From contig NW_025767301.1 in the NCBI RefSeq assembly GCF_003918875.1, positions 3,596,001 through 3,660,000 on the forward strand: DNA of 64,000 nt, in the 5' to 3' direction. The translations under genes and the position numbers were made by a program. Below are positions 17,990 through 37,728 of this stretch, one piece after another. The notes under the pieces are model-generated. The model searched no databases and was not told the DNA's origin. It saw only the letters and a list, made by a program, of their open reading frames with translations. How positions within the stretch are numbered: position 1 is the stretch's first letter; every line of letters starts with the position of its first letter. This DNA comes from Haliotis rubra. Lineage: Eukaryota.

Positions 17990-18238
17990 CGGTAGTAATA
18001 GGAGTAGTAGAAGCAGTAGCCGTGATATTATTGGTTGTGGTAGTAGTAGTGATAATGGTGGATTAAATAGTAAGTAGTAATAGCAGCAGTAGTAGTAGCA
18101 GCAGTAGTAGTAGTAGTAACAGCGATAGTAGTAGTAGTAGCAGTACTGATAGTAGTAACAGCAGGAGGAACAGTATTACCAGCGACAGCAGTAGCAGTAG
18201 GAGTAACACCGACAGTATTAGTAGCAGTAGAAGTAGTT

Positions 18239-18275
<37 letters not shown>

Positions 18276-19850
18276 ATGTAGATGTAGTAGCAGTAACAGT
18301 AAGAGGGGCAGTAGTATTTGTAGCAGTGGTAGTAGTAACAACAACAGGGGCCGTATTAGAAGCANNNNNNNNNNNNNNNNNNNNNNNNNNNNNNNNNNNN
18401 NNNNNNNNNNNNNNNNNNNNNNNNNNNNNNNNNNNNNNNNNNNNNNNNNNNNNNNNNNNNNNNNNNNNNNNNNNNNNNNNNNNNNNNNNNNNNNNNNNNN
18501 NNNNNNNNNNNNNNNNNNNNNNNNNNNNNNNNNCAGCAGTAATGGTAGTAGCAGCAGTAGTAGTAGTAGCAGCAGCAGTAGTAGTAGTCGTAGTAGTAGC
18601 AGCAGCAGTAGCAGTAGCAGCAGCAGTAGTAGTAGTAGTACCAGCAGTAGTAGTAGTAGTACCAGCAGCAGTAGTAGTAGTCGTCGTAGTAGTAGCAGCA
18701 GCAGTAGTAGAAGTAGCAGTAGCAGTAGCAGAGTAACAGCAAAGTAGTAGTAGTAGTAGTAGTCGTGGTAGTAGTGACAGTAGTAGCAGCAAGAGGGACA
18801 GTATTAGAAGCAGCAGCATCAGTGATAGTAGTAGCAGTAGCAGTAGTAGTAGCAGTGGTAGTAGCAGCAGCAGCAGCAATAGTAGTAGTAGTAGCAGCAG
18901 CAGTAATGGTAGTAGCAGCAGTANNNNNNNNNNNNNNNNNNNNNNNNNNNNNNNNNNNNNNNNNNNNNNNNNNNNNNNNNNNNNNNNNNNNNNNNNNNNN
19001 NNNNNNNNNNNNNNNNNNNNNNNNNNNNNNNNNNNNNNNNNNNNNNNNNNNNNNNNAGAGCAGTAGCAGTAGTAGTAGCAGTAATATTAGTAGCAGTAGC
19101 AGTAGTAGTAGCAGTAATAGTAGTAGTAGCAGTAATATAAGTAGTAGTAGCAGCAGCAGCAGTAGTAGTAGTAGCAGCAGCAGTAGCAGCAGCAGTAGTA
19201 GGAGCAGCAGTAGCAGTNNNNNNNNNNNNNNNNNNNNNNNNNNNNNNNNNNNNNNNNNNNNNNNNNNNNNNNNNNNNNNNNNNNNNNNNNNNNNNNNNNN
19301 NNNNNNNNNNNNNNNNNNNNNNNNNNNNNNNNNNNNNNNNNNNNNNNNNNNNNNNNNNNNNNNNNNNNNNNNNNNNNNNNNNNNNNNNNNNNNNNNNNNN
19401 NNNNNNNNNNNNNNNNNNNNNNNNNNNNNNNNNNNNNGCAGCAGTAACAGTAGTAGTAGCAGTAATAGTAGTAGTAGCAGTAGTAGTAGCGGTAATAGTA
19501 GCAGTAGTAGTAGTAGCAGTAATAGTAGTAGTAACAGTGATAGTAGCAGTAATAGTAGTAGTAGCAGTAGTAGTAGCAGTAATAGTAGCAGTAATAGTAG
19601 TAGTAGCANNNNNNNNNNNNNNNNNNNNNNNNNNNNNNNNNNNNNNNNNNNNNNNNNNNNNNNNNNNNNNNNNNNNNNNNNNNNNNNNNNNNNNNNNNNN
19701 NNNNNNNNNNNNNNNNNNNNNNNNNNNNNNNNNNNNNNNNNNNNNNNNNNNNNNNNNNNNNNNNNNNNNNNNNNNNNNNNNNNNNNNNNNNNNNNNNNNN
19801 NNNNNNNNNNNNNNNNNNNNNNNNNNNNNNNNNNNNNNGTTGTAGTAGTA
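17990..19850. repeat. (GTA/GCA)n compound microsatellite with assembly gaps
   Basis: Seen directly. Confidence 0.95.
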
Positions 19851-20649: not shown

Positions 20650-22215
20650 TAGCGTTAGGCGTTAGTAACTGGGTAGACGTCGGGTATGTTGTATGTGTAG
20701 TGATGGGGTTAGTGTGAGACGTTAGTTACTGGGTAGACGTCGGGTATGTTGTATGTGTAGTGGTGGGGTTAGTGTGAGACGTTAGTTACTGGGTAGACGT
20801 CGGGTATGTTGTATGTGTAGTGATGGGGGTAGCGTTAGACGTTAGTAACTGGGTAGACGTCGGGTATGTTGTATGTGTAGTGATGGGGTTAGTGTTACAC
20901 GTAAGGTACTGGGTAGACGCCGGGTATGTTGTATGTGTAGTGGTGGGGGTAGCGTTAGACGTTAGGTATTGGGTAGACATCGGGTATGTTGTATGTGTAG
21001 TGGTGGGGGTAGCGTTAGACGTTAGTTACTGGGTAGACGTCGGGCATGTTGTATGTGTAGTGATGGGGGTAGCGTTAGACGTTAGTAACTGGGTAGACGT
21101 CGGGTATGTTGTATGTGTAGTGATGGGGTTAGTGTTACACGTAAGGTACTGGGTAGACGCCGGGTATGTTGTATGTGTAGTGATGGGGTTATTGTTACAC
21201 GTAAGGTACTGGGTAGACGTCGGGTATGTTGTATGTGTAGTGATGGGGTTAGTGTTACACGTAAGGTACTGGGTAGACGTCGGGTATGTTGTATGTGTAG
21301 TGATGGGGTTAGTGTGACACGTAGACATCGGGTAAGGTACTGGGTAGACGCCGGGTATGTTGTATGTGTAGTGATGGGGTTATTGTTACACGTAAGGTAC
21401 TGGGTAGACGCCGGGTATGTTGTATGTGTAGTGATGGGGTTAGTGTTACACGTAAGGTACTGGGTAGACGTCGGGTATGTTGTATGTGTAGTGATGGGGT
21501 TAGTGTGAGACGTTAGTTACTGGGTAGACGTCGGGTATGTTGTATGTGTAGTGATGGGGTTAGTGTTACACGTAAGGTACTGGGTAGACGTCGGGTATGT
21601 TGTATGTGTAGTGATGGGGTTAGTGTGAGACGTTAGTTACTGGGTAGACATCGGGTATGTTGTATGTGTAGTGGTGGGGTTAGTGTGAGACGTTAGTTAC
21701 TTGGTAGACATCGGGTATGTTGTATGTGTAGTGATGGGGGTAGCGTTAGACGTTAGTTACTGGGTAGACATCGGGTAGACATCGGGTATGTTGTATGTGT
21801 AGTGATGGGGGTAGCGTTAGACGTTAGGTATTGGGTAGACATCGGGTATGTTGTATGTGTAGTGGTGGGGGTAGCGTTAGACGTTAGTTACTGGGTAGAC
21901 ATCGGGTATGTTGTATGTGTAGTGGTGGGGGTAGCGTTAGACGTTAGTTACTGGGTAGGCATCGGGTATGTTGTATGTGTAGTGGTGGGGTTAGTGTTAG
22001 ACGTTAGTTACTGGGTAGACGTCGGGTATGTTGTATGTGTAGTGATGGGGTTAGTGTTAGACGTAAGGTACTGGGTAGACGTCGGGTATGTTGTATGTGT
22101 AGTGATGGGGTTAGTGTTAGACGTAAGGTACTGGGTAGACGTCGGGTATGTTGTATGTGTAGTGGTGGGGGTAGCGTTAGACGTAAGGTACTGGGTAGAC
22201 ATCGGGTATGTTGTA
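20650..22215. repeat. 60-bp GT-rich satellite, about 26 copies
   Basis: Unit ACTGGGTAGACGTCGGGTATGTTGTATGTGTAGTGATGGGGTTAGTGTGAGACGTTAGTT. Confidence 0.95.
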
Positions 22216-22519: not shown

Positions 22520-25500
22520 TGACAGCATGTTATGTGTGTATGGTGCGAAGGTGTTAGGGTGACAGCATTTCGGTCGTGGTCTAAGGGTTGACATCCAGTA
22601 TGTTATGTGTGTATGTGTAGGGTATCGTGGTGTTGACAGGTGTTATGTGTGTATGGTGCGAGGTCTAAGGGTTGGTCATGACATACAGTATGTTATGTGT
22701 GTATGGTGCGAGGTGTTAGGGTAGGTCGTGGTCTAAGGGTTGACATCCAGTATGTTATGTGTGTATGGTGCGAGGTGTTAGGGGTCGTGGTCTAAGGGTT
22801 GACATCCAGTATGTTATGTGTGTATGGTGCGAGGTGTGTTAGGGTGGGTCGTGGTCTAAGGGTTGACATGACAGTATGTTATGTGTGTATGGTGCGAGGT
22901 GTTAGGGTAGGTCCTGGTCTAAGGGTTGACATCCAGTATGTTATGTGTGTATGGTGCGAGGTGTTAGGGTAGGTCCTGGTCTAAGGGTTGACATCCAGTA
23001 TGTTATGTGTGTATGGTGCGAGGTGTTAGGGTAGGTCGTGGTCTAAGGGTTGACATCCAGTATGTTATGTGTGTATGGTGCGAGGTGTTAGGGTAGGTCC
23101 TGGTCTAAGGGTTGACATCCAGTATGTTATGTGTGTATGGTGGTTGACATCCAGGTGTTAGGGGGTCGAGGTGTTGGTCTAAGGGTTGACATCCAGTATG
23201 TTATGTGTGTATGGTGCGCAGGTGTTAGGGTAGGTCGTGGTCTAAGGGTTGACATCCAGTATGTTATGTGTGTATGGTGCGAGGTGTTAGGGTAGGTCGT
23301 GGTCTAAGGGTTGACATCCAGTATGTTATGTGTGTATGGTCTAGTATTGGTGTGACATCCAGGTGTTAGGGTAGGGTGGTCTAGTCTAAAGGGTTGACAT
23401 CCAGTATGTTATGTGTGTATGGTGCGAGGTGTTAGGGTAGGTCGTGGTCTAAGGGTTGACATCCAGTATGTTATGTGTGTATGGTGCGAGGTGTTAGGGT
23501 AGGTCGTGGTCTAAGGGTTGACATCCAGTATGTTATGTGTGTATGGTGCGAGGTGTTAGGGTAGGTCGTGGTCTAAGGGTTGACATCCAGTATGTTATGT
23601 GTGTATGGTGCCAGGTGTTAGGGTAGGTTGTGGTCTATGGGTTGACATTGCAGTATGTTATGTGTGTATGGTGCGAGGTGTTAGGGTAGGTCGTGGTCTA
23701 AGGGTTGACATCCAGTATGTTATGTGTGTATGGTGCGAGGTGTTAGGGTAGGTCGTGGTCTAAGGGTTGACATCCAGTATGTTATGTGTGTATGGTGCGA
23801 GGTGTTAGGGTAGGTCGTGGTCTAAGGGTTGACATCCAGTATGTTATGTGTGTATGGTGCGAGGTGTTAGGGTAGGTCGTGGTCTAAGGGTTGACATCCA
23901 GTATGTTATGTGTGTATGGTGCGAGGTGTTAGGGTAGGTCGTGGTCTAAGGGTTGACATCCAGTATGTTATGTGTGTATGGTGCGAGGTGTTAGGGTAGG
24001 TCGTGGTCTAAGGGTTGACATCCAGTATGTTATGTGTGTATGGTGCGAGGTGTTAGGGTAGGTCGTGGTCTAAGGGTTGACATCCAGTATGTTATGTGTG
24101 TATGGTGCGAGGTGTTAGGGTAGGTCGTGGTCTAAGGGTTGACATCCAGTATGTTATGTGTGTATGGTGCGAGGTGTTAGGGTAGGTCGTGGTCTAAGGG
24201 TTGACATCCAGTATGTTATGTGTGTATGGTGCGAGGTGTTAGGGTAGGTCGTGGTCTAAGGGTTGACATCCAGTATGTTATGTGTGTATGGTGCCAGGTG
24301 TTAGGGGTCGTGGTCTAAGGGTTGACATCCAGTATGTTATGTGTGTATGGTGCGAGGTGTTAGGGTAGGTCGTGGTCTAAGGGTTGACATCCAGTATGTT
24401 ATGTGTGTATGGTGCGAGGTGTTAGGGGTCGTGGTCTAAGGGTTGACATACAGTATGTTATGTGTGTATGGTGCCAGGTGTTAGGGTAGGTCGTGGTCTA
24501 AGGGTTGACATCCAGTATGTTATGTGTGTATGGTGCGAGGTGTTAGGGGTTGTGGTCTAAGGGTTGACATCCAGTATGTTATGTGTGTATAGTGCCAGGT
24601 GTTAGGGGTTGTGGTCTAAGGGTTGACATCCAGTATGTTATGTGTGTATAGTGCGAGGTGTTAGGGGTCGTGGTCTAAGGGTTGACATCCAGTATGTTAT
24701 GTGTGTATGGTGCGAGGTGTTAGGGTAGGTCGTGGTCTAAGGGTTGACATTCAGTATGTTATGTGTGTATAGTGCGAGGTGTTAGGGGTCGTGGTCTAAG
24801 GGTTGACATTCAGTATGTTATGTGTGTATAGTGCCAGGTGTTAGGGGTTGTGGTCTAAGGGTTGACATTCAGTATGTTATGTGTGTATAGTGCCAGGTGT
24901 TAGTGTAGCTTGTGGTCTATGGGTTGCATTGCAGTATGTTATGTGTGTATGTTGCCAGGTGTTAGTGTAGCTTGTGGTCTATGGGTTGCATTGCAGTATG
25001 TTATGTGTGTATGGTGCGAGGTGTTAGGGTAGGTCGTGGTCTAAGGATTGACATACAGTATGTTATGTGTGTATGGTGCGAGGTGTTAGGGTAGGTCATG
25101 GTTTAAGGGTTGACATCCAGTATATTATGTGTGTTTAGTGTGAGGTGTTAGGGTAGGTCGTGGTCTAAGGGTTGACATCCAGTATGTTATGTGTGTATGG
25201 TGCGAGGTGTTAGGGTAGGTCGTGGTCTAAGGGTTGACATCCAGTATATTATGTGTGTTTAGTGTGGTGCTAGGGTAGGTCCTGGTCTAAGGGTTCACAT
25301 CCAGTATGTTATGTGTGTATGGTGAAAGGTGTTAGAGTAGGTCGTGGTCTAAGGGTTGACATCCAGTATGTTATGTGTGCATTGTGCAAGGTGTTAGGGG
25401 TCCTGGTCTAAGGGTTGACATCCAGTATGTTATGTGTGTATGATGCGAGGTGTTAGGGTAGGTCGTGGTCTAAGGGTTGACATCCAGTATGTTATGTGTG

Positions 25501-27143
25501 TATCGTGCGAGGTGTTAGGGGTCGTGGTCTAAGGGTTGACATACAGTATGTTATGTGTGTATAGTGCCAGGTGTAAGGGGTTGTGGTCTAAGGGCTAACA
25601 TTCAGTATGTTATGTGTGTATAGTGCCAGGTGTTAGGGGTTGTGGTCTAAGGGTTGACATCCAGTATGTTATGTGTGTATAGTGCCAGGTGTTAGGGGTT
25701 GTGGTCTAAGGGTTGACATTCAGTATGTTATGTGTGTATAGTGCGAGGTGTTAGGGGACGTGGTCTAAGGGTTGACATTCAGTATGTTATGTGTGTATAG
25801 TGCGAGGTGTTAGGGGTTGTGGTCTAAGGGTTGAGATTCAATATATTATGTGTGTATAGTACCAGGTGTTAGGGGTTGTGGTCTAAGGGTTGACATTCAG
25901 TATGTTATGTGTGTATGGTGCGAGGTGTTGGTAGGTCGTGGTCTAAGGGTTGACATCCAGTATGTTATGTGTGTATGGTGCGAGGTGTTAGGGTAGGTCG
26001 TGGTCTAAGGGTTGACATCCAGTATGTTATGTGTGTATGTATGGTGCGAGGTGTTAGGGTAGGTCGTGGTCTAAGGGTTGACATCCAGTATGTTATGTGT
26101 GTATGGTGCGAGGTGTTAGGGTAGGTCGTGGTCTAAGGGTTGACATCCAGTATGTTATGTGTGTATGGTGCGAGGTGTTAGGGTAGGTCGTGGTCTAAGG
26201 GTTGACATCCAGTATATTATGTGTGTTTAGTGTGAGGTGTTAGGGTAGGTCGTGGTCTAAGGGTTGACATCCAGTATGTTATGTGTGTATGGTGCGAGGT
26301 GTTAGGGTAGGTCGTGGTCTAAGGGTTGACATCCAGTATGTTATGTGTGTATGGTGCGAGGTGTTAGGGTAGGTCTGGTCTAAGGGTGGTCTAAGGGTTG
26401 ACATCCAGTATGTTGTGTGTATGGTGCGTATGTTATGTGTGTGTTAGGTGTAGGTCGTGGTCTAAGGGTTGACATCCAGTATGTTATGTGTGTATGGTGC
26501 CAGGTGTTAGGGTAGGTCGTGGTCTAAGGGTTGACATCCAGTATGTTATGTGTGTATGGTGCGAGGTGTTAGGGTAGGTCGTGGTCTAAGGGTTGACATC
26601 CAGTATGTTATGTGTGTATGGTGCGAGGTGTTAGGGGGTCGTGGTCTAAGGTTCGTGGTCTAAGGGTGTGTATAGTGACATCCAGTATGTTGGTCTGTGT
26701 GTATTCAGTATGTATGTGAGGTGTGTTAGGGGGGGTGGTCTAAGGGTTGTGGTGTGTAAGGGTTGACATCAGTATGTTCTAGGTGTGTCATGGTGTGTAT
26801 ATGGCCAGGTGTTATGTGGTCTAAGGGTTGACATCCAGTATGTTATGTGTGTATGGTGTTAGGGAGGTGTTAGGACATCCAGTAGTTATGTGTGTATGGG
26901 TCTAAGGGTTGACATTGCAGTATGTTATGTGTGTATGGTGCGAGGTGTTAGGGTAGGTTGTGGTCTATGGGTTGCATTGCAGTATGTTATGTGTGTATGG
27001 TGCGAGGTGTTAGGGTAGGTCGTGGTCTATGGGTTGCATTGCAGTATGTCATGTGTGTATGGTGCGAGGTGTTAGGGTAGGTCGTGGTCTATGGGTTGCA
27101 TTGCAGTATGTTATTTGTGTATGGTGTTAGGGTAGGTCGTGGC
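22520..27143. repeat. 62/58-bp satellite containing TTAGGG, about 75 copies
   Basis: Unit GTTGACATCCAGTATGTTATGTGTGTATGGTGCGAGGTGTTAGGGTAGGTCGTGGTCTAAGG. Confidence 0.95.
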
Positions 27144-27974
27144 CTTAGCGAGGTCTTGCTTGTCTATCAATGATCATGGCCTACACTGGATGTAGGTTCA
27201 GCTTGGATGTAAGGGTGGTTGCACAAGCATTATAGGGATGTATCTAGGGTGTCTAGGAAGTTTCGGGTTGACTTCGGGTTGTTTGTATACAGTGGTGAGT
27301 TACCGGTATGGCTTTAGGGGAAATGTTTCGGGGTTGATGTACATGTGATGTGTGGTGGGGATACTCAAGCTACACCAGCTACATCACACCAGAAACTAAC
27401 TTCACACGTTGTTATCGTGTAGGGCACCAAACCCGTGTGTTCGGCGTCAAATCTTTATCCACTAGACTAACCCACTATCCGACGACGGCGTGCAAATGAA
27501 CAAATTCATTTCAATTAAACACGACCTTGTGATAATTCTAAATTATCTAAACGGTTTTTTTTCTGGTTCACTGATCACCTGATTGTCTGGTTTGTTTACA
27601 GGACGCCGTCGCTTAGGCATATTGTGTGAATGGAAATGCCTTCCCTTTTCGCGAACACCAGGTGTCATGACTGATTTTCAAAGTCAATTCGTATGCTGTC
27701 CACAGCTATTTTCCCGTTTACACCAAACATAATTATTCTGGGTATTCTGTACAGTGATGTTTGTATCTGATTATAGTGCGATAGTAGGCCACTTGTAAAT
27801 ATGTATCCCAAGTTCCAGTTTAAATTAATGCCTGTCAGTGCAACAGGGATGGTGATAGAGGTTGGGTTACATGTCGGGTGTACGGGTGGATATCCAAATA
27901 GGGCACATTTCCAATGTACATCAGTTAGGGTCATAGGTTATACTTCACCCTATAACTTTCAAATTAAAATCCAT

Positions 27975-28098
27975 GTTTAGCAATATTCCAGCAATATCAC
28001 GGCGGGGGACACACATTTTGTACCCATGTGGGGAATCAAACCCCGGGTTTTAGGCTGACGAGCGAACGAATTGACCACTAGGCTACCCCCACCGCCCC
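27975..28098 (-). mobile_element. SINE family A
   Basis: Matches the other copies in this window. Confidence 0.75.
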
Positions 28099-28504
28099 GT
28101 AATCCCACAACGAGGCTTATATTGCCATATATATATAGCTTCAACTTGGTTTTTCTTCTGCAAATGAGTCCCTCGTGGTAGCTACGGTACTGGTCACCAG
28201 TACAGATAGGTAATCGTGGAGTTTGTAGGTCACGTGTTGCTTCCAGTCGCCGATCGCTGACTTCCTTAATACATGTATATGTGACAGTTAGACATATTTT
28301 CTTACGGAGGCAATGCAGGTGTTAATCTATGCTGAAAATGATATGTTCGGCGTATGTATGTTAATCTGTGTGTATATATATATCAACATAATATGCTATA
28401 GACCACTTGTCTGCAACTGGGCGTGAGCGGGTTGTGGTGTATGTGATTACACGGCGACATGCGTATTGCTGGAACACATAGCAGTACATCACATAGCATC
28501 ATAG

Positions 28505-28667
28505 AGGAGGCGACGGGTAGCCTTGTGGATAAAGTGTTCACGCCGAAGACTGGGTTCAATTCCCCAAATGGGTACAACGTGTAAAGCCCATTTATTGTGT
28601 CCCCTGCCATGATATTGCTGGAATATTGCTAAAAACGTCATAAAACCAAACTCACCCACTCACTCAT
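28505..28667 (+). mobile_element. SINE family A
   Basis: Matches the other copies; (ACTC)n tail. Confidence 0.8.
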
Positions 28668-30420: not shown

Positions 30421-30751
30421 GTGGTGCAATGGTGATAAATTGTACTTTTGAATTTTATACAAGTTCATTCATTAAACTGGATGAAGTGCACTCGAGCCGT
30501 TTGATGATAGGTCGCGCAACGTGAATGTGTATTGGTGCACGTGTACTTAGACAACGTGCTGAAAAACTGTGTTTCGCTATTTATGGAAGAGAAGGATTGA
30601 CTCCATGACGCATACAAACTACAGACACAATATCTACAGTTCTGTCTTAATGAATACTTGCAGGTAAAGGCGACACGCCTACGAGACAGGAAAAGTCAAA
30701 GGTAGAGGTAGCTGGAATATAAAGTTATTTGCACTGGCTTACTTCAACGCT

Positions 30752-30900
30752 GGGGGCGGTGGAGTAGCCTAGTGGTTAAAGCGTTCGCTCATCACGCCGA
30801 AGACCTGGGTTCGATTCCCCACATGGGTACAATGTGGGAAGCCCATTTCTGGTGCCCCCCTCCGTGATATTGCTGGAAGATTGCTAAAAGCGGCGCAACA
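30752..30900 (+). mobile_element. SINE family A
   Basis: Full tRNA head and body. Confidence 0.85.
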
Positions 30901-31291
30901 AAGAAAATTTACCTGTCTTTCTATATGCGAGCAAAGCGAGCAAAGGTTGGCAAAATATTTTTTTAAGCGAGGGCAGTAAGTGGCAACCTTTACTCTCTTC
31001 GCTCGCATATATGAAGACTGGTCATTTTCTCTTTGTTGCGCAACCGTATTTGCGCTACAGTTTGCCTGTGAGCTAACTCACTCACTCAACGCTGGTTCCT
31101 ACCAAGTGAAAGTTTACATGTTTCGTCTGGAAGAAGAATGTGTACACACAAGAAGTGGTTATAGGGAGGTGATGTATCTGCTACGGCTATCATAGATGCA
31201 TTTTGGATCTTAGGTTTGGAATGTGTCAGGTAGGGTAATAACATTTGTAATATTTTGCCACATCCAATTTTCAGTTGTATACTTTCTTTGG

Positions 31292-31448
31292 GAGTAAATG
31301 AGTAACTATGGTTTTACGCTGCTTTTGCATCATTATCAAGGCGGAGGACACAGACATCGGCCTCACATCTTTTACGCATGTGAGAAATCGAACCCGGTAT
31401 TCTGCGTGACGAGCGGACGCTTTAACCACTAGGCTATCCCACCGCCCC
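31292..31448 (-). mobile_element. SINE family A (diverged)
   Basis: Matches the other copies. Confidence 0.7.
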
Positions 31449-31703
31449 ATTCTTTCTTTGATCAGCAGTTTATAACAGTATTTTCTTCCTTAACTATCGA
31501 CAGGATAGAATCTGTCAGCTGTTATCAAACCATCAGATCGTTCATTATTAACTCTACTAAGTGGTCGTATGATTGACTCTTGAGTGTCGTGAGTGAGTTA
31601 GAGAGAGTTGTTTCACGTCCCCTTTTCACAATTTCCATGCAATATCATGGTGGTGGAAAACAGGAGGGACCTTCGAGTTTCGACATATAAGTTAACACAT
31701 AAG

Positions 31704-33420
31704 CAGAGGCGGATCCAGGAATTTTCAATGTTATGTGTGTATGGTTCGTTAGGGTAGGTAGTGGTCTAAGGGTTGACATCCAGTATGTTATGTGTGTATG
31801 GTGCGAGGTGTTAGGGGTCGTGGTCTAAGGGTTGACATCCAGTGTGTTATGTCTGTATGGTGCGAGATGTTAGGGTAGGTTGTGGCCTAAGGGTTGACAT
31901 CCAGTATGTTATGTGTGTATGGTTCGAGGTGTTAGGAGTAGTGGCCTAAGGGTTGACATCCAGTATGTTATGTGTGTATGGTTCAAGGTGTTAGGAGTAG
32001 TGGTCTAAGGGTTGACATCCAGTATGGTTCAAGGTGTTAGGAGTCGTGGTCTAAGGGTTGACATCCAGTATGTTATGTGTGTATGGTGCCAGGTGTTAGG
32101 TAGGTCCTGGTTTAAGGGTTGACATACAGAATGTTATGTGTGTATGGTGCGAGGTGTTAGGAGTCGTGGTCTAAGGGTTGACATCCAGTATATTATGTGT
32201 GTATGGTGCCAGGTGTTAGGGGTTGTGGTCTAAGGGTTGACATCCAGTATGTTATGTGTGTATGGTGCGAGGTGTTAGGGTAGGTCGTGGTCTAAGGGTT
32301 GACATCCAGTGTGTTATGTGTGTATGGTGCGAGGTGTTAGGGTCGTGGTCTAAGTGTTGACATCCAGTATATTATGTGTGTATAGAGCGAGGTGTTAGGG
32401 TCGTGGTCTAAGGGTTGACATCCAGTATATTATGTGTGTATAGTGCGAGGTGTTAGGGTCGTGGTCTAAGGGTTGACATACAGTATATTATGTGTGTATA
32501 GTGCGAGGTGTTAGTGTCGTGGTCTAAGGGTTGACATCCAGTATGTTATGTGTGTATAGTGCGAGGTGTTAGGGGTCGTGGTCTAAGGGTTGACATCCAG
32601 TATGTTATGTGTGTATGGTGCGAGGTGTTAGGTAGGTCGTGGTCTAAGGGTTGACATACAGTATGTTATGTGTGTATAGTGCGAGGTGTTAGGGGTCGTG
32701 GTCTAAGGGTTGACATACAGTATGTTATGTGTGTATGGTTCGAGATGTTAGGGGTCGTGGTCTAAAGGTTGACATCCAGTATGGTATGTGTGTATAGTGC
32801 GAGGTGTTAGGGTAGGTCGTGGTCTAAAGGTTGACATCCAGTATGGTATGTGTGTATAGTGCGAGGTGTTAGGGTAGGTCGTGGTCTAAGGGCTGACCTC
32901 CAGTATGTTATGTGTATATAGTGCGAGGTGTTAGGGTAGGTCGTGGTCTAAGGGTTGACATCCAGTGTGTTATGTGTATAGTGCGAGGTGTTAGGGTAGG
33001 TTGTGGTCTAAGGGTTGACATCCAGTATGTTATGTGTATATAGTGCGAGGTGTTAGGGTAGGTCGTGGTCTAAGGGTTGACATCCAGTGTGTTATGTGTA
33101 TGGTGCGGGGTGTTAGGGTAGGTCGTGGTCCGAGGGAGGACTTGATTGTCTTCCATTGATCATTTCTTATTTTGGGTGTAGGTTGAGCTTGGATGTAGGG
33201 TTTGTTGTACATGCATTGTAGGGGCTTATGTAGGGTGTTAGGGGAAGCTTCAGGTTTAAGGGTACACTTCGGGTTGTTTGTATACAGTGGTGAGTTACCG
33301 GTATGGCTTTAGGGGAAAGGTTTCGGGGTTGATGTACATGTGATGTGTGGTGGGGATACACCAGCTACATATGGGGAGTTGTCAGGGAAACCCCGAACCA
33401 CCCCTGTGGATCCGCGAATG
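31704..33420. mobile_element. Non-autonomous TIR element enclosing satellite cargo
   Basis: TIRs CAGAGGCGGATCCA / TGGATCCGCGAATG; ATAAG direct repeat at 31699-31703 and 33421-33425. Confidence 0.7.
31728..33130. repeat. Second array of the 62/58-bp satellite
   Basis: Same unit as 22520-27143. Confidence 0.95.
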
Positions 33421-36400
33421 ATAAGTCGGCCTTAACCACGTGTTTAAGGCATTCATGCACAGACAGTTAGCACAGATGTGAAGATGCATCGTCGACACGT
33501 GATGACGTACACAGTTCGATATTATCAAAAACATATCTTGTCAAAATCTTCACCTACAAAACTGGAACTCAATAATCAGCTCGGCACGGCACCACTCCCT
33601 GTGTATGCGCCCGTTTTAATAACTGTCCGGGAAAACGGTTAACAGGAGTATGGAGTGGTGCCCTTTTATATACATGTATACTTCCTGAAAGAGACGATCT
33701 TAAGTGAAGAGGGTTTACTGGGCGGGGTCGAGGTATTTAGTCGAGGTGGGGTCGTCCTGCTAAGACAATAACTTGTGTTTGCCGAAGTCAAGGGATATAA
33801 AGTAGGTGTAAATTGGACTGTGAGACAGGTAACGATACTTCAGAGGACAAGTCTCTTAAAGTGGGGAAGGGGTCACTGCTATATTGCAATAATAAGGTAA
33901 ACGTTATAAATCCACGTGTTTCTCTCACTCTCAAACAAAAGGTGTTAGCGAGCTCTAAAATTGTTTTCAAGTCCAACAAGTTCTGTAGACATTCGCGAAT
34001 AATTTCGACTAGGCTCTTGAATTCGATGTTCACTCGTTCAGAACATATGGAATATCAAGAAAAACTACAGAACTTGGAATCGAAGAAAAATACAAAATAT
34101 CTGACTGTATTAAAAAACCCACTCGCGGAAAAAAGCCGAAAAGGAAATTCCTTCCTAGAATACTTTAGAATAAAATATGGAAATGTTAATTTCAGTTAAA
34201 GGCATACATGAATACAATCACAAGTATATAGATATCGTTATTCTTCAAAAAGGTTGTAGCATGGTAAAGTGGTAATCGTTTAAATTTGAAAAAGATGTAG
34301 AAAATGCCTTTTAATATTGAAATATTCATAGCAAAGACGGGTAAATATGACCCAAATATTAGTTACTGTTATTCTGTTCTCAGACGTTGTGAGCATATGA
34401 TGTCAGCACAGTACAGTTATACAAACAAATACTTCTGAGCAAAGGAAAGTATTCAATATAAATTACAAATGTTGTTGAAACGTTACTAGGCTGAAACAGT
34501 CGCCGAAATACTGCAAACCTTGTCCGAAACGCAACCAGGATACCCATAACACCATCCAATAATATTTTCTGGTTTGTTTACTATTTTATCCACCAAAAAT
34601 TGTTTTATACGTTCATTTGCCCTGCACTTTAGAAAACAAGGGGAAAATGTAAAGCGCTTTCAGGTGTAGGCTGAACGCCGGACCTTACAAATTACAGCCA
34701 TACCCGCACGCACGGCCGTGTACCGAACACACAAATCACAAGCACATTTCAGCTGCCTCTTACAATGGCCGGCACACAAGAGCCGTGGAGCAGGACGTGG
34801 TGGTTCTATAACGTCGACCCCGAAATACCGGACCCTGTAAATTAGAAACTAATCTATTTCTCGTGTTTGACTTAGGATTTTGACATAAGTTTAGAAAAAT
34901 GGACAGAGGATGTAGTTGTAGAATATAGAAGGAATTAAAATATAATGACAAGGAACCCTGAGACTGACACTTGCATGGGCTTTCTTGGATATATTTGTTT
35001 CAGGGTCTGTATGACAGACTATTACCAACTGTGCTCTTTTAGATGTTATCTCAAGTACTGATGGAAACATGATCTGCCATAATTGAGGGAGTCTTTGGTT
35101 TCGCAGCTTTTATCAATATTCCACCAACGTAACCGCGGTGGGTTGAGCGGGACCACAACTTGTAGCAGTAATGGACGTGGCGGACGCTATAACTACTGTG
35201 CTGCCCACTGCACCCAAAGAGAGAGATATATGACAATGACTCCGGAGATTGTGTACAACATGCACTTGAATTACATTATCCCCAGGCGATACATACATTG
35301 TATGGTGATTGTGCGTCTACACTCTGCGCTGGACTATAATGGACCCTTGTTAAACCGGACAGTGTTGTTTATGATTAAATCCTCTTGATTCTCGTATGTG
35401 GAATCAGGGACCATATAATAGACTCTGGTGTAATGGGGTATTTTCTGCCCCTGCTTATCTATTTTTAGCTTCTTGACGATTATATGTATCAATAAACTTC
35501 AGGACGTGTTTTTCCAAAGTTCGCTATTCTGCCATCTTTTCACTTCGCACATGCGATGTGCATGTTGCTGATGAACATCAGAAGATGCTGTACAGACATG
35601 CGCAGACTGACCCTATCGACCGGAGCCTGCTCCACGCGCCTGAAATAGACATGCGGAGATCGTACAGCACCAGTCATGAGTGACGGCTGACGTGCCTCCT
35701 ACCATCTCAACTCGCTCTGTACTTCGGAGGCCACACTCCGTAGGGTTAGAATAACGCGACCTCTTGAGCATCATAAACTGTTGGTAGCGAGTTTGTGAGG
35801 GTCCAGGGAGCTGTATGTTATTGTTGACAGGTGTGAGCTGTGGAGGTACATACAGTTATACTCCTGTCGAGAAATGAGAGCCGGCAGATGAAGGGGATAT
35901 AGCGTAACGGGGCGGAGAAGAGAGAAGGCTTGATTTCAGTGTGTCGTCTGCTCGGCAAAGTTTGGATGAACTTTTCTAGGTGAGAATGACCCTTCTCCGA
36001 TACACCTACACCCACGCCTCAGCTCATTCTGTGTAGACATTGGCATGTACATGCACGAATATAGAAGACATATTCATTGATACCCGGGCGTGTCTACAGT
36101 TTGATTCAAAGATTGACATTTGAAGATCTGTTATTGAAACGAGTACGCTCGACTTTACACCTTGTGCGTTTACGTTTTTGTGAAGCGAGACACAACTGCC
36201 CTGCTATATTGTTAGATATGTTTGCAATGAAACGTTTGTTGCTGAGCTGTGCTACACCGGCAGTTGGGAGAGAGGCATACAAATCCCAGTGGTGAGGAAA
36301 CCGGTGAAGAGTGAAATATCCTGATCTCTCATGGATCGGACGGAAGCGAGTTACACAGCGAATTAATCTCACCTGGATCTCACCTGGGACGGGTAATTCG

Positions 36401-36738
36401 ATTTGTAGTTGTACAATGGTGGAAATTGACCGAAGGATATAGGATTTGTGTCCAAGGCTCAACGGAACCGTGCAGGTATTACAGAATGCATGCAGATTGA
36501 TCGCAAAGCTACACATGTAATCAGAGACCAACCGTTTACATGTTGGTTTTGATAGACTGGGTGGCTTTTCTGATTGAATAGAAGACGGGACGAGGCCTCC
36601 GGACGATGTGATGTAGGGATCAGCGGTGTGGTAAATGCGGATAGTTTGCACAGAGAATTGTGTTTGCTGTGGAAATTGAGAGGGATTCGTTGACGGTGTG
36701 TGTGTCAAAGGTCAGAACGGTTCGGAAGAATAGGAATC

Positions 36739-37728
36739 ATGGGTTACAGTATCAACAAGTTCGTCAGTGCGGTCGATCCTAACTTGATATGCGGTATTTG
36801 CGGCTGTGTTTTGCAAGACGCTGTGTTGACCCCGTGTGGTCATACATTTTGTTGTCTGTGTCTGGACACCTGGCTCACCAGACCCGGGACGGACACCTGT
36901 CCGGAATGTCGGACTCACGTCGGGGACGACGGGGGCAGCCCCGTCCACTCTCTGCGGAACCTCATCAACGGCTTCGAGGTGGAATGCGACCAGGCAGAGA
37001 GGGGTTGTAAAGTTGTTCTTAAGCTGGACCGTCTCAAGTCTCATCTTGACACGTGTGCGTACTTCCCCGTGGAATGCGCAGGATGCGATGAAGTGATCAA
37101 CAGGTTTGAACTGGCCAGTCATCAGATCCAGTGCGTGGGGATCGCGGCTTCCGTGGAGGAGGGGGAGGTGGACACAACGTGGATTGACCGGATGAGGCGA
37201 CGAAGAGCCACAGAAGCGATCAACAACGCAGAGATAACCGAACTTCTATGCAGGATTAGCTCCCTTGAAATGCAAGTCGCCAAATTTAAACGGGATATTG
37301 AGCTCGCTAATGCCAAAAACAGGATGATAGAGAAAGAATACATTAAGGTGAAGGAGGAACTGAACTGTACCAGACACGAGGTGGTTGAGCTCCAATCCTC
37401 TGACTACGACCCTAAGTACGACTATGGCCACACGCCTCAAAGCATGGCCCGGCTGTCACTACTGATAGCCAAGTACCTACTCCAGAGGCCCAGACATATA
37501 GACAGTGACTACATCTTCTCCGCCGTCAAGAAGTGCTACGAGCAGTACTTCCGCTGCAACAGCGACTTCGAACACGACGTCCATATGCTCCTGGCGACTG
37601 CGTTTGCCAGCAACTGGTTCACGCCGTCTCAGAGATTGAGCCTTGGATGCTGGCTGCAGTGCATTGCCAGATACCGCCATGATACTCGGGATTCAGCCAG
37701 GTACAGCCCGATAGTGATGGTTCGCTGA
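36739..37728 (+). CDS. RING-HC + TRAF/SIAH-type zinc-finger E3 ubiquitin ligase, N-terminus similar to PDZRN3/RNF151/NRDP1; 329 aa, uninterrupted CDS
   Basis: Starts MGYSINKFVSAVDPNLICGICGCVLQDAVLTPCGHTFCCLCLDTWL..CPEC (C3HC4). Followed by C..RGC..V.L..L..H..C.Y.P..C.GC..I.R.EL..H..C, a coiled coil and a helical C-terminus. GC3-rich codons stand out against the AT-rich background; AATAAA at 38043. Confidence 0.9.
   Translation: MGYSINKFVSAVDPNLICGICGCVLQDAVLTPCGHTFCCLCLDTWLTRPGTDTCPECRTHVGDDGGSPVHSLRNLINGFEVECDQAERGCKVVLKLDRLKSHLDTCAYFPVECAGCDEVINRFELASHQIQCVGIAASVEEGEVDTTWIDRMRRRRATEAINNAEITELLCRISSLEMQVAKFKRDIELANAKNRMIEKEYIKVKEELNCTRHEVVELQSSDYDPKYDYGHTPQSMARLSLLIAKYLLQRPRHIDSDYIFSAVKKCYEQYFRCNSDFEHDVHMLLATAFASNWFTPSQRLSLGCWLQCIARYRHDTRDSARYSPIVMVR

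What the first reader, a model, noticed from the sequence alone, without database searches (positions are those of the whole stretch)
31699..33425. TIR element carrying a 1.65-kb copy of a nearby satellite array and its unique flank
Seen: CA(nnn)GCGGATCCA inverted termini flanked by an ATAAG direct repeat. Inside are about 1.4 kb of the 62/58-bp satellite and about 240 bp of non-repetitive sequence (33130-33370) homologous to 27143-27384, the flank of the large array. Inference: either a Pack-type MITE captured local DNA and could disperse the satellite, or satellite+flank is itself a mobile cassette (Helitron/Helentron-like) that inserted into a MITE. The flank copies are nearly identical distally but more diverged next to the array, which argues against an assembly duplication.
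Basis: partly seen in the sequence, partly recalled or inferred. Interest (0 to 1): 0.7.

Follow-up and report, generated by a model that had tools for sequence, protein, structure and literature searches.

The report
MITE filled with neighbouring tandem array
A small non-autonomous DNA transposon holds a 1.64-kb copy of a tandem-repeat array and its edge from 4.3 kb away; this is a single-copy "Pack-TIR" of a kind already described in animals, and it has not spread the repeat.

Summary
Window 31704-33420 is a real member of an abundant MITE family. The 22-base left end has 1,686 genome matches and the 20-base right-end consensus has 2,559; the controls gave 0 and 8. Ten of 13 complete sampled copies have perfect 5-bp target-site duplications, and here it is ATAAG on both sides.

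The normal ~100-bp MITE core is replaced by 1,644 bp: about 23 monomers of a 58-62-bp repeat plus 235 bp of its degenerate 3' edge. This is paralogous to the 4.6-kb array and flank that end at 27384, 4.3 kb upstream in the same orientation.

The "satellite" is not genome-wide. All 74 monomer hits and both flank hits in the 1.38-Gb assembly lie in this window. The cargo therefore has not dispersed and is not a mobile Helitron/Helentron cassette, whose end features are also absent.

The best fit is the single-copy Pack-TIR class of Tan et al. 2021: transposition-independent gap filling by template switching into nearby DNA (inferred, about 0.65). Short-read contigs from two samples of one organism bridge the left junction at 0-1 differences. 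A contig from a second organism bridges it at about 93% identity, so the structure is real and old.

The transposon superfamily is unassigned. No long reads were available. Verdict: a new member of a known kind, of modest interest.

The parts
31699..31703 (.). Left copy of the 5-bp target-site duplication, ATAAG.
   Evidence: The family makes 5-bp TSDs: 10 of 13 complete copies are perfect.
31704..31729 (+). MITE left arm, CAGAGGCGGATCCAGGAATTTTCAAT. The TIR is 31704-31719.
   Evidence: The 22-mer is identical to 10 other genome copies and has 1,686 matches at up to 3 mismatches against 0 in the control. Aligned with family copies.
31728..33136 (+). Captured tandem array: about 23 monomers of 58-62 bp (one of 46 bp), G-rich on the + strand.
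   Evidence: TRF and monomer list. It is 88-90.6% identical to any register of the big array, with no preferred register.
33137..33371 (+). Captured degenerate 3' edge of the array (the 'flank'), paralogous to 27143-27384.
   Evidence: It contains a decayed monomer at about 33233-33281.
33266..33359 (+). A 94-bp block 98.9% identical to donor 27271-27364, probably a gene-conversion tract.
   Evidence: No Rfam hit and no excess RNA structure.
33372..33420 (+). MITE right arm (variable region 2 plus TIR). The TIR is 33405-33420, ending GGATCCGCGAATG.
   Evidence: It is 2 mismatches from the right-end consensus CCCCTCTGGATCCGCCAATG, which has 2,559 hits against 8 in the control. Family alignment.
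33421..33425 (.). Right copy of the TSD, ATAAG.
22520..27142 (+). Parental (donor) 62-bp tandem array of about 72 monomers. It has no MITE termini.
   Evidence: It is the only other place in the genome with this monomer. No other TIR core lies in the window.
27143..27384 (+). Donor flank. Its last ~25 bases appear to run into the head of a tRNA-derived SINE that continues to about 27490.
   Evidence: The SINE assignment of the last 25 bases is weak.
20650..22215 (+). A related, older 60-bp tandem array ('sat A') upstream of the donor. It shows that the donor locus is the native home of this repeat.
   Evidence: Sat A against sat B scores 28, reached by 1 of 500 shuffles.

Best explanation
A ~70-200-bp MITE with TIR CAKAGGCGGATCCAGG and a 5-bp TSD inserted at ATAAG inside an old SINE copy. 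Later a double-strand break or stalled fork in its fragile, G-run and microsatellite-prone centre was repaired by DNA synthesis. That synthesis switched template to the 3' end of a tandem array 4.3 kb upstream on the same strand. It copied about 1.4 kb of array plus about 235 bp of its degenerate edge, then switched back into the MITE's right arm.

The result is a single-copy 'Pack-TIR' made by transposition-independent gap filling. Afterwards the two arrays homogenised independently and are now about 10% diverged. A short gene-conversion tract re-equalised 94 bp of the flank. The loaded element has not transposed.

Shown: family membership, the TSD, the paralogy, uniqueness in the genome, and the junctions in independent reads. 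Inferred: the order of events and the repair mechanism.
For: - Family membership of both ends and the 5-bp TSD.
- The cargo replaces the family's core exactly at the variable region after TTTTCAA. Other copies carry microsatellites or a nested insertion at that point (L033, L021, L032, L005).
- The array and flank exist only at the two sites in this window.
- The donor is 4,320 bp away in the same orientation, has no MITE ends, and sits next to a related older array.
- The cargo ends are arbitrary: inside a monomer on the left and apparently inside a SINE head on the right. Only 1-3 bp (AT or ATG) are shared at the joints.
- This matches the four signatures Tan et al. report for single-copy animal Pack-TIRs: cis bias mostly under 5 kb, median 2-bp microhomology, internal breakpoints, and single copy (PMC8277862).
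- The left junction is bridged by contigs of two samples of organism A at 0-1 differences and of organism B at about 93% identity. The array-to-flank joint is bridged at 0 differences.
Against: - No orthologous site with an unloaded MITE was seen, so in-situ filling against arrival already loaded is not decided.
- The microhomology depends on an assumed ancestral variant, TTTTCAATGGGG. L031 has CCATGGGG, but most copies have CAAAGGGG.
- The flank's uneven identity (68% against 98.9%) needs a second event.
- One organism-B contig joins 33225 to 33385, so the history of the flank may be more complex.
- No long read spans the 1.7 kb.
Confidence: 0.65

Rival explanations
1. Transposition-dependent Pack-MITE. 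The MITE acquired the array edge while sitting next to the donor, for example by fork stalling and template switching or by aberrant transposition. The loaded 1.7-kb element was then cut and pasted 4.3 kb away by the family's transposase, creating the ATAAG TSD.
For: The 5-bp TSD is perfect and both TIRs are usable. DNA transposons often hop locally (general knowledge). A second bounded copy, L012, also carries foreign DNA, so loaded members may be mobile.
Against: No MITE remnant or footprint lies beside the donor. There is only one loaded copy in the genome. In animals, single-copy cis-proximal cases are mostly transposition-independent (PMC8277862).
Confidence: 0.17
2. A DNA fragment, or an extrachromosomal circle excised from the edge of the array, was ligated by end joining into a break in the MITE, with no templated synthesis.
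For: Tandem arrays are known to shed circles (general knowledge). The joints share only 0-3 bp. The MITE centre is a hotspot for insertions.
Against: It predicts the same product as gap filling and cannot be told apart from sequence alone. The same orientation and 4.3-kb proximity are explained more directly by cis template switching (PMC8277862).
Confidence: 0.1
3. Satellite plus flank is a rolling-circle (Helitron/Helentron-type) cassette that inserted into a MITE.
For: Helentron derivatives carry tandem repeats in bivalves (PMC7492417). A small hairpin lies at the 3' end of the cargo, around 33341-33371.
Against: There are only two copies, both local. The 5' end lies inside a monomer and is not TC. 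The 3' end is CTACAT, not CTRR. The site is neither an A/T nor a TT target (criteria from PMC4067079). The hairpin is disrupted by a 9-bp indel in the donor.
Confidence: 0.03
4. Assembly artefact: a mis-joined or duplicated haplotig produced the second array.
For: Tandem arrays are error-prone in assemblies, and no long reads were available here.
Against: The two copies differ by 10-30%. Short-read contigs from separate runs carry the copy-specific junctions 31423-31777 and 33095-33289 at 0-1 differences. A second organism carries the left junction.
Confidence: 0.03

Closest known systems
Single-copy Pack-TIRs of animals formed by transposition-independent gap filling (Tan et al. 2021, Nat Commun, PMC8277862)
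   Same: TIR-transposon ends plus TSD enclose non-TE DNA. The parental copy lies under 5 kb away on the same chromosome. It is single-copy, the breakpoints are internal to the TE, and the joints share 1-3 bp.
   Different: The cargo is a tandem array with its decayed edge, not a gene fragment. The host element is a ~150-bp MITE with a 5-bp TSD and no assigned superfamily. The post-insertion order of events, shown there by primate orthology, could not be shown here.
Pack-MULE, Pack-CACTA and other Pack-TYPE elements of plants (PMC6379663, PMC8903248)
   Same: Non-autonomous TIR elements whose interior is captured chromosomal DNA.
   Different: Those are often multicopy and mobile and carry gene fragments. 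This one is single-copy, non-genic, and probably never moved after loading.
Tandem-repeat-containing MITE-like elements and HINEs of molluscs: DTC84 in Donax (PMC3879986), and Helentron-borne satDNA-like arrays in Crassostrea gigas (PMC7492417, PMC4067079)
   Same: A short non-autonomous element with a central tandem array, in what looks like a mollusc genome.
   Different: In those families the array is an integral part of the family, present in hundreds or thousands of dispersed copies, with subterminal repeats, TT targets and no TSD. Here the array is foreign to the family (no homology), unique to one locus, and enclosed by true terminal inverted repeats with a 5-bp TSD.
Abortive gap repair and filler DNA at excision sites of Ac/Ds and P elements (from memory, not checked here)
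   Same: Internal replacement of a transposon by ectopic sequence through template switching during repair.
   Different: Those were shown experimentally with known transposases. Here it is inferred from one product.

Membership tests
The CAKAGGCGGATCCAGG / 5-bp-TSD MITE family of this genome | Left terminus CA[T/G]AGGCGGATCCAGGAATTTT | tested here: met
   Exact 22-mer at 31704-31725. There are 1,686 genome matches at up to 3 mismatches against 0 in the control.
The CAKAGGCGGATCCAGG / 5-bp-TSD MITE family of this genome | Right terminus CCCCTCTGGATCCGCCAATG | tested here: met
   33401-33420 differs at 2 of 20 bases. The consensus has 2,559 matches against 8 in the control.
The CAKAGGCGGATCCAGG / 5-bp-TSD MITE family of this genome | 5-bp target-site duplication | tested here: met
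   ATAAG on both sides. Ten of 13 complete copies have perfect TSDs.
The CAKAGGCGGATCCAGG / 5-bp-TSD MITE family of this genome | Canonical core (TTCGAACCC...GCTCCGCCAATGCAAAACATTAACTTCAATGTGGTCTTAAGTCATTTTC) | tested here: not met
   The core is absent and replaced by cargo. Some natural short copies such as L023 and L007 also lack it.
Pack-TIR, single-copy gap-filling type (PMC8277862) | TE termini and TSD enclosing non-TE DNA that has a parental copy elsewhere | tested here: met
   The cargo has no homology to the MITE.
Pack-TIR, single-copy gap-filling type (PMC8277862) | Parental copy in cis and close (under 15 kb) | tested here: met
   The donor ends at 27384 and the element starts at 31704: 4.3 kb, same strand.
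Pack-TIR, single-copy gap-filling type (PMC8277862) | Microhomology at the breakpoints | tested here: inconclusive
   One to 3 bp (A, AT or ATG) are shared, depending on which MITE variant was ancestral.
Pack-TIR, single-copy gap-filling type (PMC8277862) | Unloaded TE at the orthologous site in an outgroup (capture after insertion) | not testable with these tools
   The only other organism with reads (B) already has the loaded left junction.
Helitron | 5' TC and 3' CTRR ends, subterminal 3' palindrome, insertion between A and T, no TSD (PMC4067079) | tested here: not met
   The cargo begins GTTATG inside a monomer and ends CTACAT. The outer element has a 5-bp TSD.
Helentron / HINE (DINE-1-like) | Subterminal inverted repeats, TT/T-rich target, no TSD, 3' stem-loop, many dispersed copies (PMC4067079) | tested here: not met
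   The inverted repeats are terminal, the TSD is ATAAG, there are no T runs, and the cargo has 2 local copies only.
Transib superfamily | 5-bp TSD | tested here: met
Transib superfamily | TIR beginning CACNNTG and a RAG1-like transposase in the genome (criteria from memory) | tested here: inconclusive
   The TIR begins CA[T/G/A/C]AGGC, which does not fit. PF12940 found nothing in this genome, but the tool's 14 controls were also silent.
Satellite DNA in the genome-wide sense | Many arrays or dispersed copies across the genome | tested here: not met
   All 74 monomer matches and all BLAST candidates lie in the two arrays of this window.

The most novel reading that the evidence does not exclude
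The loaded MITE may be a transposition-competent vehicle caught at the first step of satellite seeding. Its intact TIRs could let the family's transposase move a 1.4-kb array to new loci. This would show directly how cut-and-paste MITEs, and not only Helentrons, can found new tandem-array loci in molluscs. A side possibility is that the 94-bp block, kept at about 99% between paralogues and apparently between two organisms, is maintained because it is functional.
Probability: 0.07. Interest if true: 0.6.

Novelty: new member of a known kind. Interest (0 to 1): 0.3.

Why it matters
It is a clean, fully bounded example of a TIR element packaging a tandem array from next door. That bears on how tandem repeats might be copied to new places by DNA transposons. 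Here the evidence says the copy was made once, locally, long ago, and went no further. It therefore illustrates the known gap-filling route to Pack-TIRs rather than a new dispersal mechanism.

It also documents an abundant, apparently undescribed MITE family with thousands of ends and an unusual 5-bp TSD. Its G-rich centre is a hotspot for microsatellites, nested insertions and foreign DNA.

Tried and rejected
- Genome-wide dispersal of the cargo. The flank, the right 64 bp and the monomer core were each searched across the 1.38-Gb assembly, and only the window's two sites appeared.
- Satellite born from the MITE. Four MITE copies aligned to a satellite dimer score no better than shuffles.
- A collinear source segment in the big array. 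No register stands out; identities are 85-90.6%.
- Transib as the parent. PF12940 found nothing, but the control genomes were also silent, so this is uninformative.
- A functional RNA in the conserved block. Rfam found nothing there and folding z-scores are positive.
- Fetching 8 kb downstream of 17 'orphan' left ends, to count long or loaded or autonomous copies. The frequency of loaded copies rests on 30 loci with 1.5-kb flanks.
- Literature search for the TIR sequence returned only BamHI cloning primers.
- Earlier scan notes held nothing on this family.
- No transposase ORF lies in the window.
- Long-read confirmation. All the runs served were short-read contig sets.
Full report
**What is in the sequence.** The window is G000:C2411:3596001-3660000 of a 1.38-Gb, 2,855-contig eukaryotic assembly. 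From its tRNA-derived SINEs and repeat style I take it for a mollusc; that is my inference and was not tested. At 31699-31703 and 33421-33425 the sequence reads ATAAG. Directly inside lie CAGAGGCGGATCCAGG on the left and, in reverse complement, CATTCGCGGATCCACA on the right. Between them TRF finds 23.5 copies of a 59-62-bp unit at 31728-33130. These are followed by about 235 bp that align to 27143-27384, the sequence just after the large 62-bp array at 22520-27142. A genome search gives this pair 82% identity, E 6e-62.

**Are the termini more than chance?** Within the window they are not: the 12-base core with up to 2 mismatches is expected 1.45 times and is found once. Genome-wide they are.
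- The 22-base left end has 850 forward and 836 reverse matches at up to 3 mismatches, against 0 for the reversed control.
- The 20-base right-end consensus CCCCTCTGGATCCGCCAATG has 1,290 + 1,269 matches at up to 2 mismatches, against 8. This element's right end differs from it at two positions.

I oriented 30 sampled loci. They show a MITE of about 70-330 bp with this layout:
- a left arm, ...GGAATTTTCAAAG;
- a variable G-run or microsatellite region;
- a core, TTCGAACCC...GCTCCGCCAATGCAAAACATTAACTTCAATGTGGTCTTAAGTCATTTTCAAAAG;
- a second variable region;
- the right end.

Thirteen of the 30 have a recognisable right end. Ten of those have a perfect 5-bp duplication, one has 4 of 5, and one is shifted by a base. 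The element in the window is therefore a bona fide member. It retains 26 bp of the left arm and about 49 bp of the right arm, with the expected TSD length.

**What the cargo is.** The repeat is not a satellite in the genome-wide sense. A 373-bp query finds only two candidate regions, both in this window. All 74 matches of a 41-base monomer core at up to 3 mismatches lie in the two arrays. The flank has just two copies, and the MITE right arm plus junction is unique.

The cargo has no detectable homology to the MITE, so it is foreign to the family. The so-called unique flank contains a decayed monomer at about 33233-33281. It is the degenerate 3' edge of the array.

The big array has no MITE termini. 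A related, more diverged 60-bp array lies upstream of it at 20650-22215. The 20.6-27.4 kb region is therefore the native locus and the donor.

The donor flank appears to run into the head of a tRNA-SINE at about 27358-27385. The homology with the small copy stops about 25 bases into that head (weak similarity). At the other end the cargo begins in the middle of a monomer. Both cargo ends are thus arbitrary breakpoints, not element termini.

**Rolling-circle alternative.** Helitrons have 5' TC and 3' CTRR ends and a subterminal palindrome, insert between A and T, and make no TSD. Helentrons and HINEs have subterminal inverted repeats, TT-rich targets, a 3' stem-loop and no TSD (PMC4067079). Neither the cargo nor the whole element fits. 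The cargo ends are GTTATG... and ...CTACAT. The whole element has terminal repeats and a 5-bp TSD. A small hairpin at the 3' end of the cargo is broken by a 9-bp indel in the donor. With only two local copies there is no sign of mobility. I reject this reading.

**Most likely mechanism.** Tan et al. 2021 (PMC8277862) catalogued 370 Pack-TIRs in 100 animal genomes. They concluded that single-copy ones arise mostly by transposition-independent gap filling. They cite four signatures:
- capture in cis, mostly under 5 kb from the parent;
- microhomology at the breakpoints, median 2 bp;
- breakpoints internal to the TE;
- the TE pre-existing at the site.

Here the parent is 4,320 bp away in the same orientation and the element is single-copy. 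The breakpoints lie in the MITE's interior. The left breakpoint sits at the variable region after TTTTCAA, where other copies carry (GT)n or (GA)n expansions or a nested palindromic insertion (L033, L021, L032, L005).

The joints share 1-3 bases. The product reads CAAT|GTTATG where the donor reads GTAT|GTTATG. It reads CTACAT|ATGGGG where a MITE variant of the TTTTC(A/C)ATGGGG type, as in L031, would supply the bases. This depends on which variant was ancestral, so I score microhomology as inconclusive. The fourth signature, an unloaded MITE at the orthologous site, could not be tested.

I put in-situ gap filling by template switching at about 0.65. Loading beside the donor followed by a local hop gets about 0.17. 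End-joining of a free fragment or circle gets about 0.1. The last cannot be told from gap filling by sequence alone.

**Age and later history.** The small array is only 85-90.6% identical to any register of the big one, with no preferred register. Its monomer variants are its own. The copy is therefore old and the arrays have homogenised separately.

The flank is a mosaic. Positions 33137-33262 are 68% identical to the donor, while 33266-33359 have one mismatch in 94. A short gene-conversion tract between paralogues 6 kb apart is the simplest account. Nothing suggests a structured RNA there.

**Read support.** Only short-read contig sets were served.
- Contigs of two samples of organism A bridge 31423-31777 (unique DNA, TSD, TIR and first monomer) with 0-1 differences.
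- One organism-A contig bridges the array-to-flank joint 33095-33289 with 0 differences.
- A 761-bp contig of organism B covers 31307-31803 with 32 substitutions and 9 gaps. The loaded left junction is therefore present in a second, roughly 6% diverged organism or haplotype.

The structure is thus neither an assembly duplication nor recent.

One organism-B contig joins 33225 to 33385 with 12 intervening letters that match 33371-33384 minus three bases. That is a form lacking 33226-33370. Other, lower-depth organism-B contigs cover 33196-33359 at 99% identity or more. I cannot tell a deletion allele from an ancestral shorter capture or a paralogue, and I leave this unexplained.

**Is loading recurrent in the family?** Among the other 29 sampled left ends, one (L012) lies about 300 kb away on the same contig. 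It is bounded by a family right end (GGATCCACCAATG) with a 4-of-5 TSD and is 770 bp long. Its interior is a 620-bp piece of a different repeat family that has at least 130 candidate loci and its own internal tandem array. Ordinary MITE copies stop at the joint, and the right joint is unique in the genome. Foreign DNA inside this MITE is therefore not a one-off.

**Superfamily.** A 5-bp TSD is unusual. Transib makes one, from memory, but the TIR here starts CA[T/G/A/C]AGGC rather than CACNNTG. A RAG1-core Pfam search found nothing, though its control genomes were also silent. A hAT subgroup with 5-bp TSDs is another candidate from memory. No transposase lies in the window. The only recognisable ORF nearby is a RING-finger protein at 36700-37728. 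The family stays unassigned.

**Verdict.** The Pack-type reading is right in structure. The dispersal and Helitron readings are not supported. This is a new member of a known kind, the single-copy animal Pack-TIR. Its unusual points are a tandem-array cargo and a host MITE with a 5-bp TSD. Interest is modest.

Noticed in passing
L012:1501-2270 (G000:C2411:3932200-3932969): A second bounded member of the same MITE family (770 bp, TSD CACCA/CACTA). It carries a 620-bp fragment of another repeat family that has at least 130 candidate loci and its own ~43-bp internal tandem array. Both joints are unique in the genome.
   Followed up: partly
G000:C191:387210-388667 and 461098-461747: Exact MITE right-end 20-mers recur on the same strand at spacings of about 126-930 bp. 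The MITE itself may be tandemly amplified there. The sequence could not be fetched.
   Followed up: no
window 33225/33385 (run X4, organism B): One contig joins 33225 to 33385 with 12 letters between, which is a form of the element without 33226-33370. Other contigs of the same run cover 33196-33359 at 99% identity or more, although the unique flanks are 93-97% identical.
   Followed up: partly
window 20650-22215: A 60-bp tandem array (25.7 copies, 91% matches) distantly related to the 62-bp array. It is separated from it by (GA)n and about 220 bp of AT-rich DNA, so the locus is a multi-generation tandem-repeat nursery with strong G-over-C skew from 18 to 27.4 kb.
   Followed up: partly
L005:1501-1831: A MITE copy with a ~150-bp perfect-palindrome element nested at the same variable region where the window's cargo sits, with a perfect CGGTA TSD for the outer MITE.
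   Followed up: no
window 30893-31041: A 149-bp hairpin (arms 30905-30952 and 30981-31028, 81% complementary) with sub-threshold Rfam hits to plant and insect miRNA precursor models. It is most likely another small foldback or MITE.
   Followed up: no
window 27385-27490, 27976-28100, 28515-28640, 30750-30890, 31393-31448, 31590-31698: Many copies, in both orientations, of a tRNA-derived SINE (GGGGAATCGAACCCGGGTCTTCGGCGTGACGAGCGAACGCTTTAACCACTAGGCTACCCCACCGCCCC). The MITE appears to have inserted inside one old copy, and the donor flank abuts another.
   Followed up: partly
window 36700-37728 (+): An ORF of 342 aa with a C3HC4 RING finger at residues 31-70 (Pfam E 1e-6), 3.3 kb downstream of the element. 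It is the only recognisable coding sequence nearby.
   Followed up: partly
window 18028-19610: About 1.6 kb of imperfect (AGT/AGC)n trinucleotide-based repeats (GC 27%, strong skew) directly upstream of the tandem-array region.
   Followed up: no
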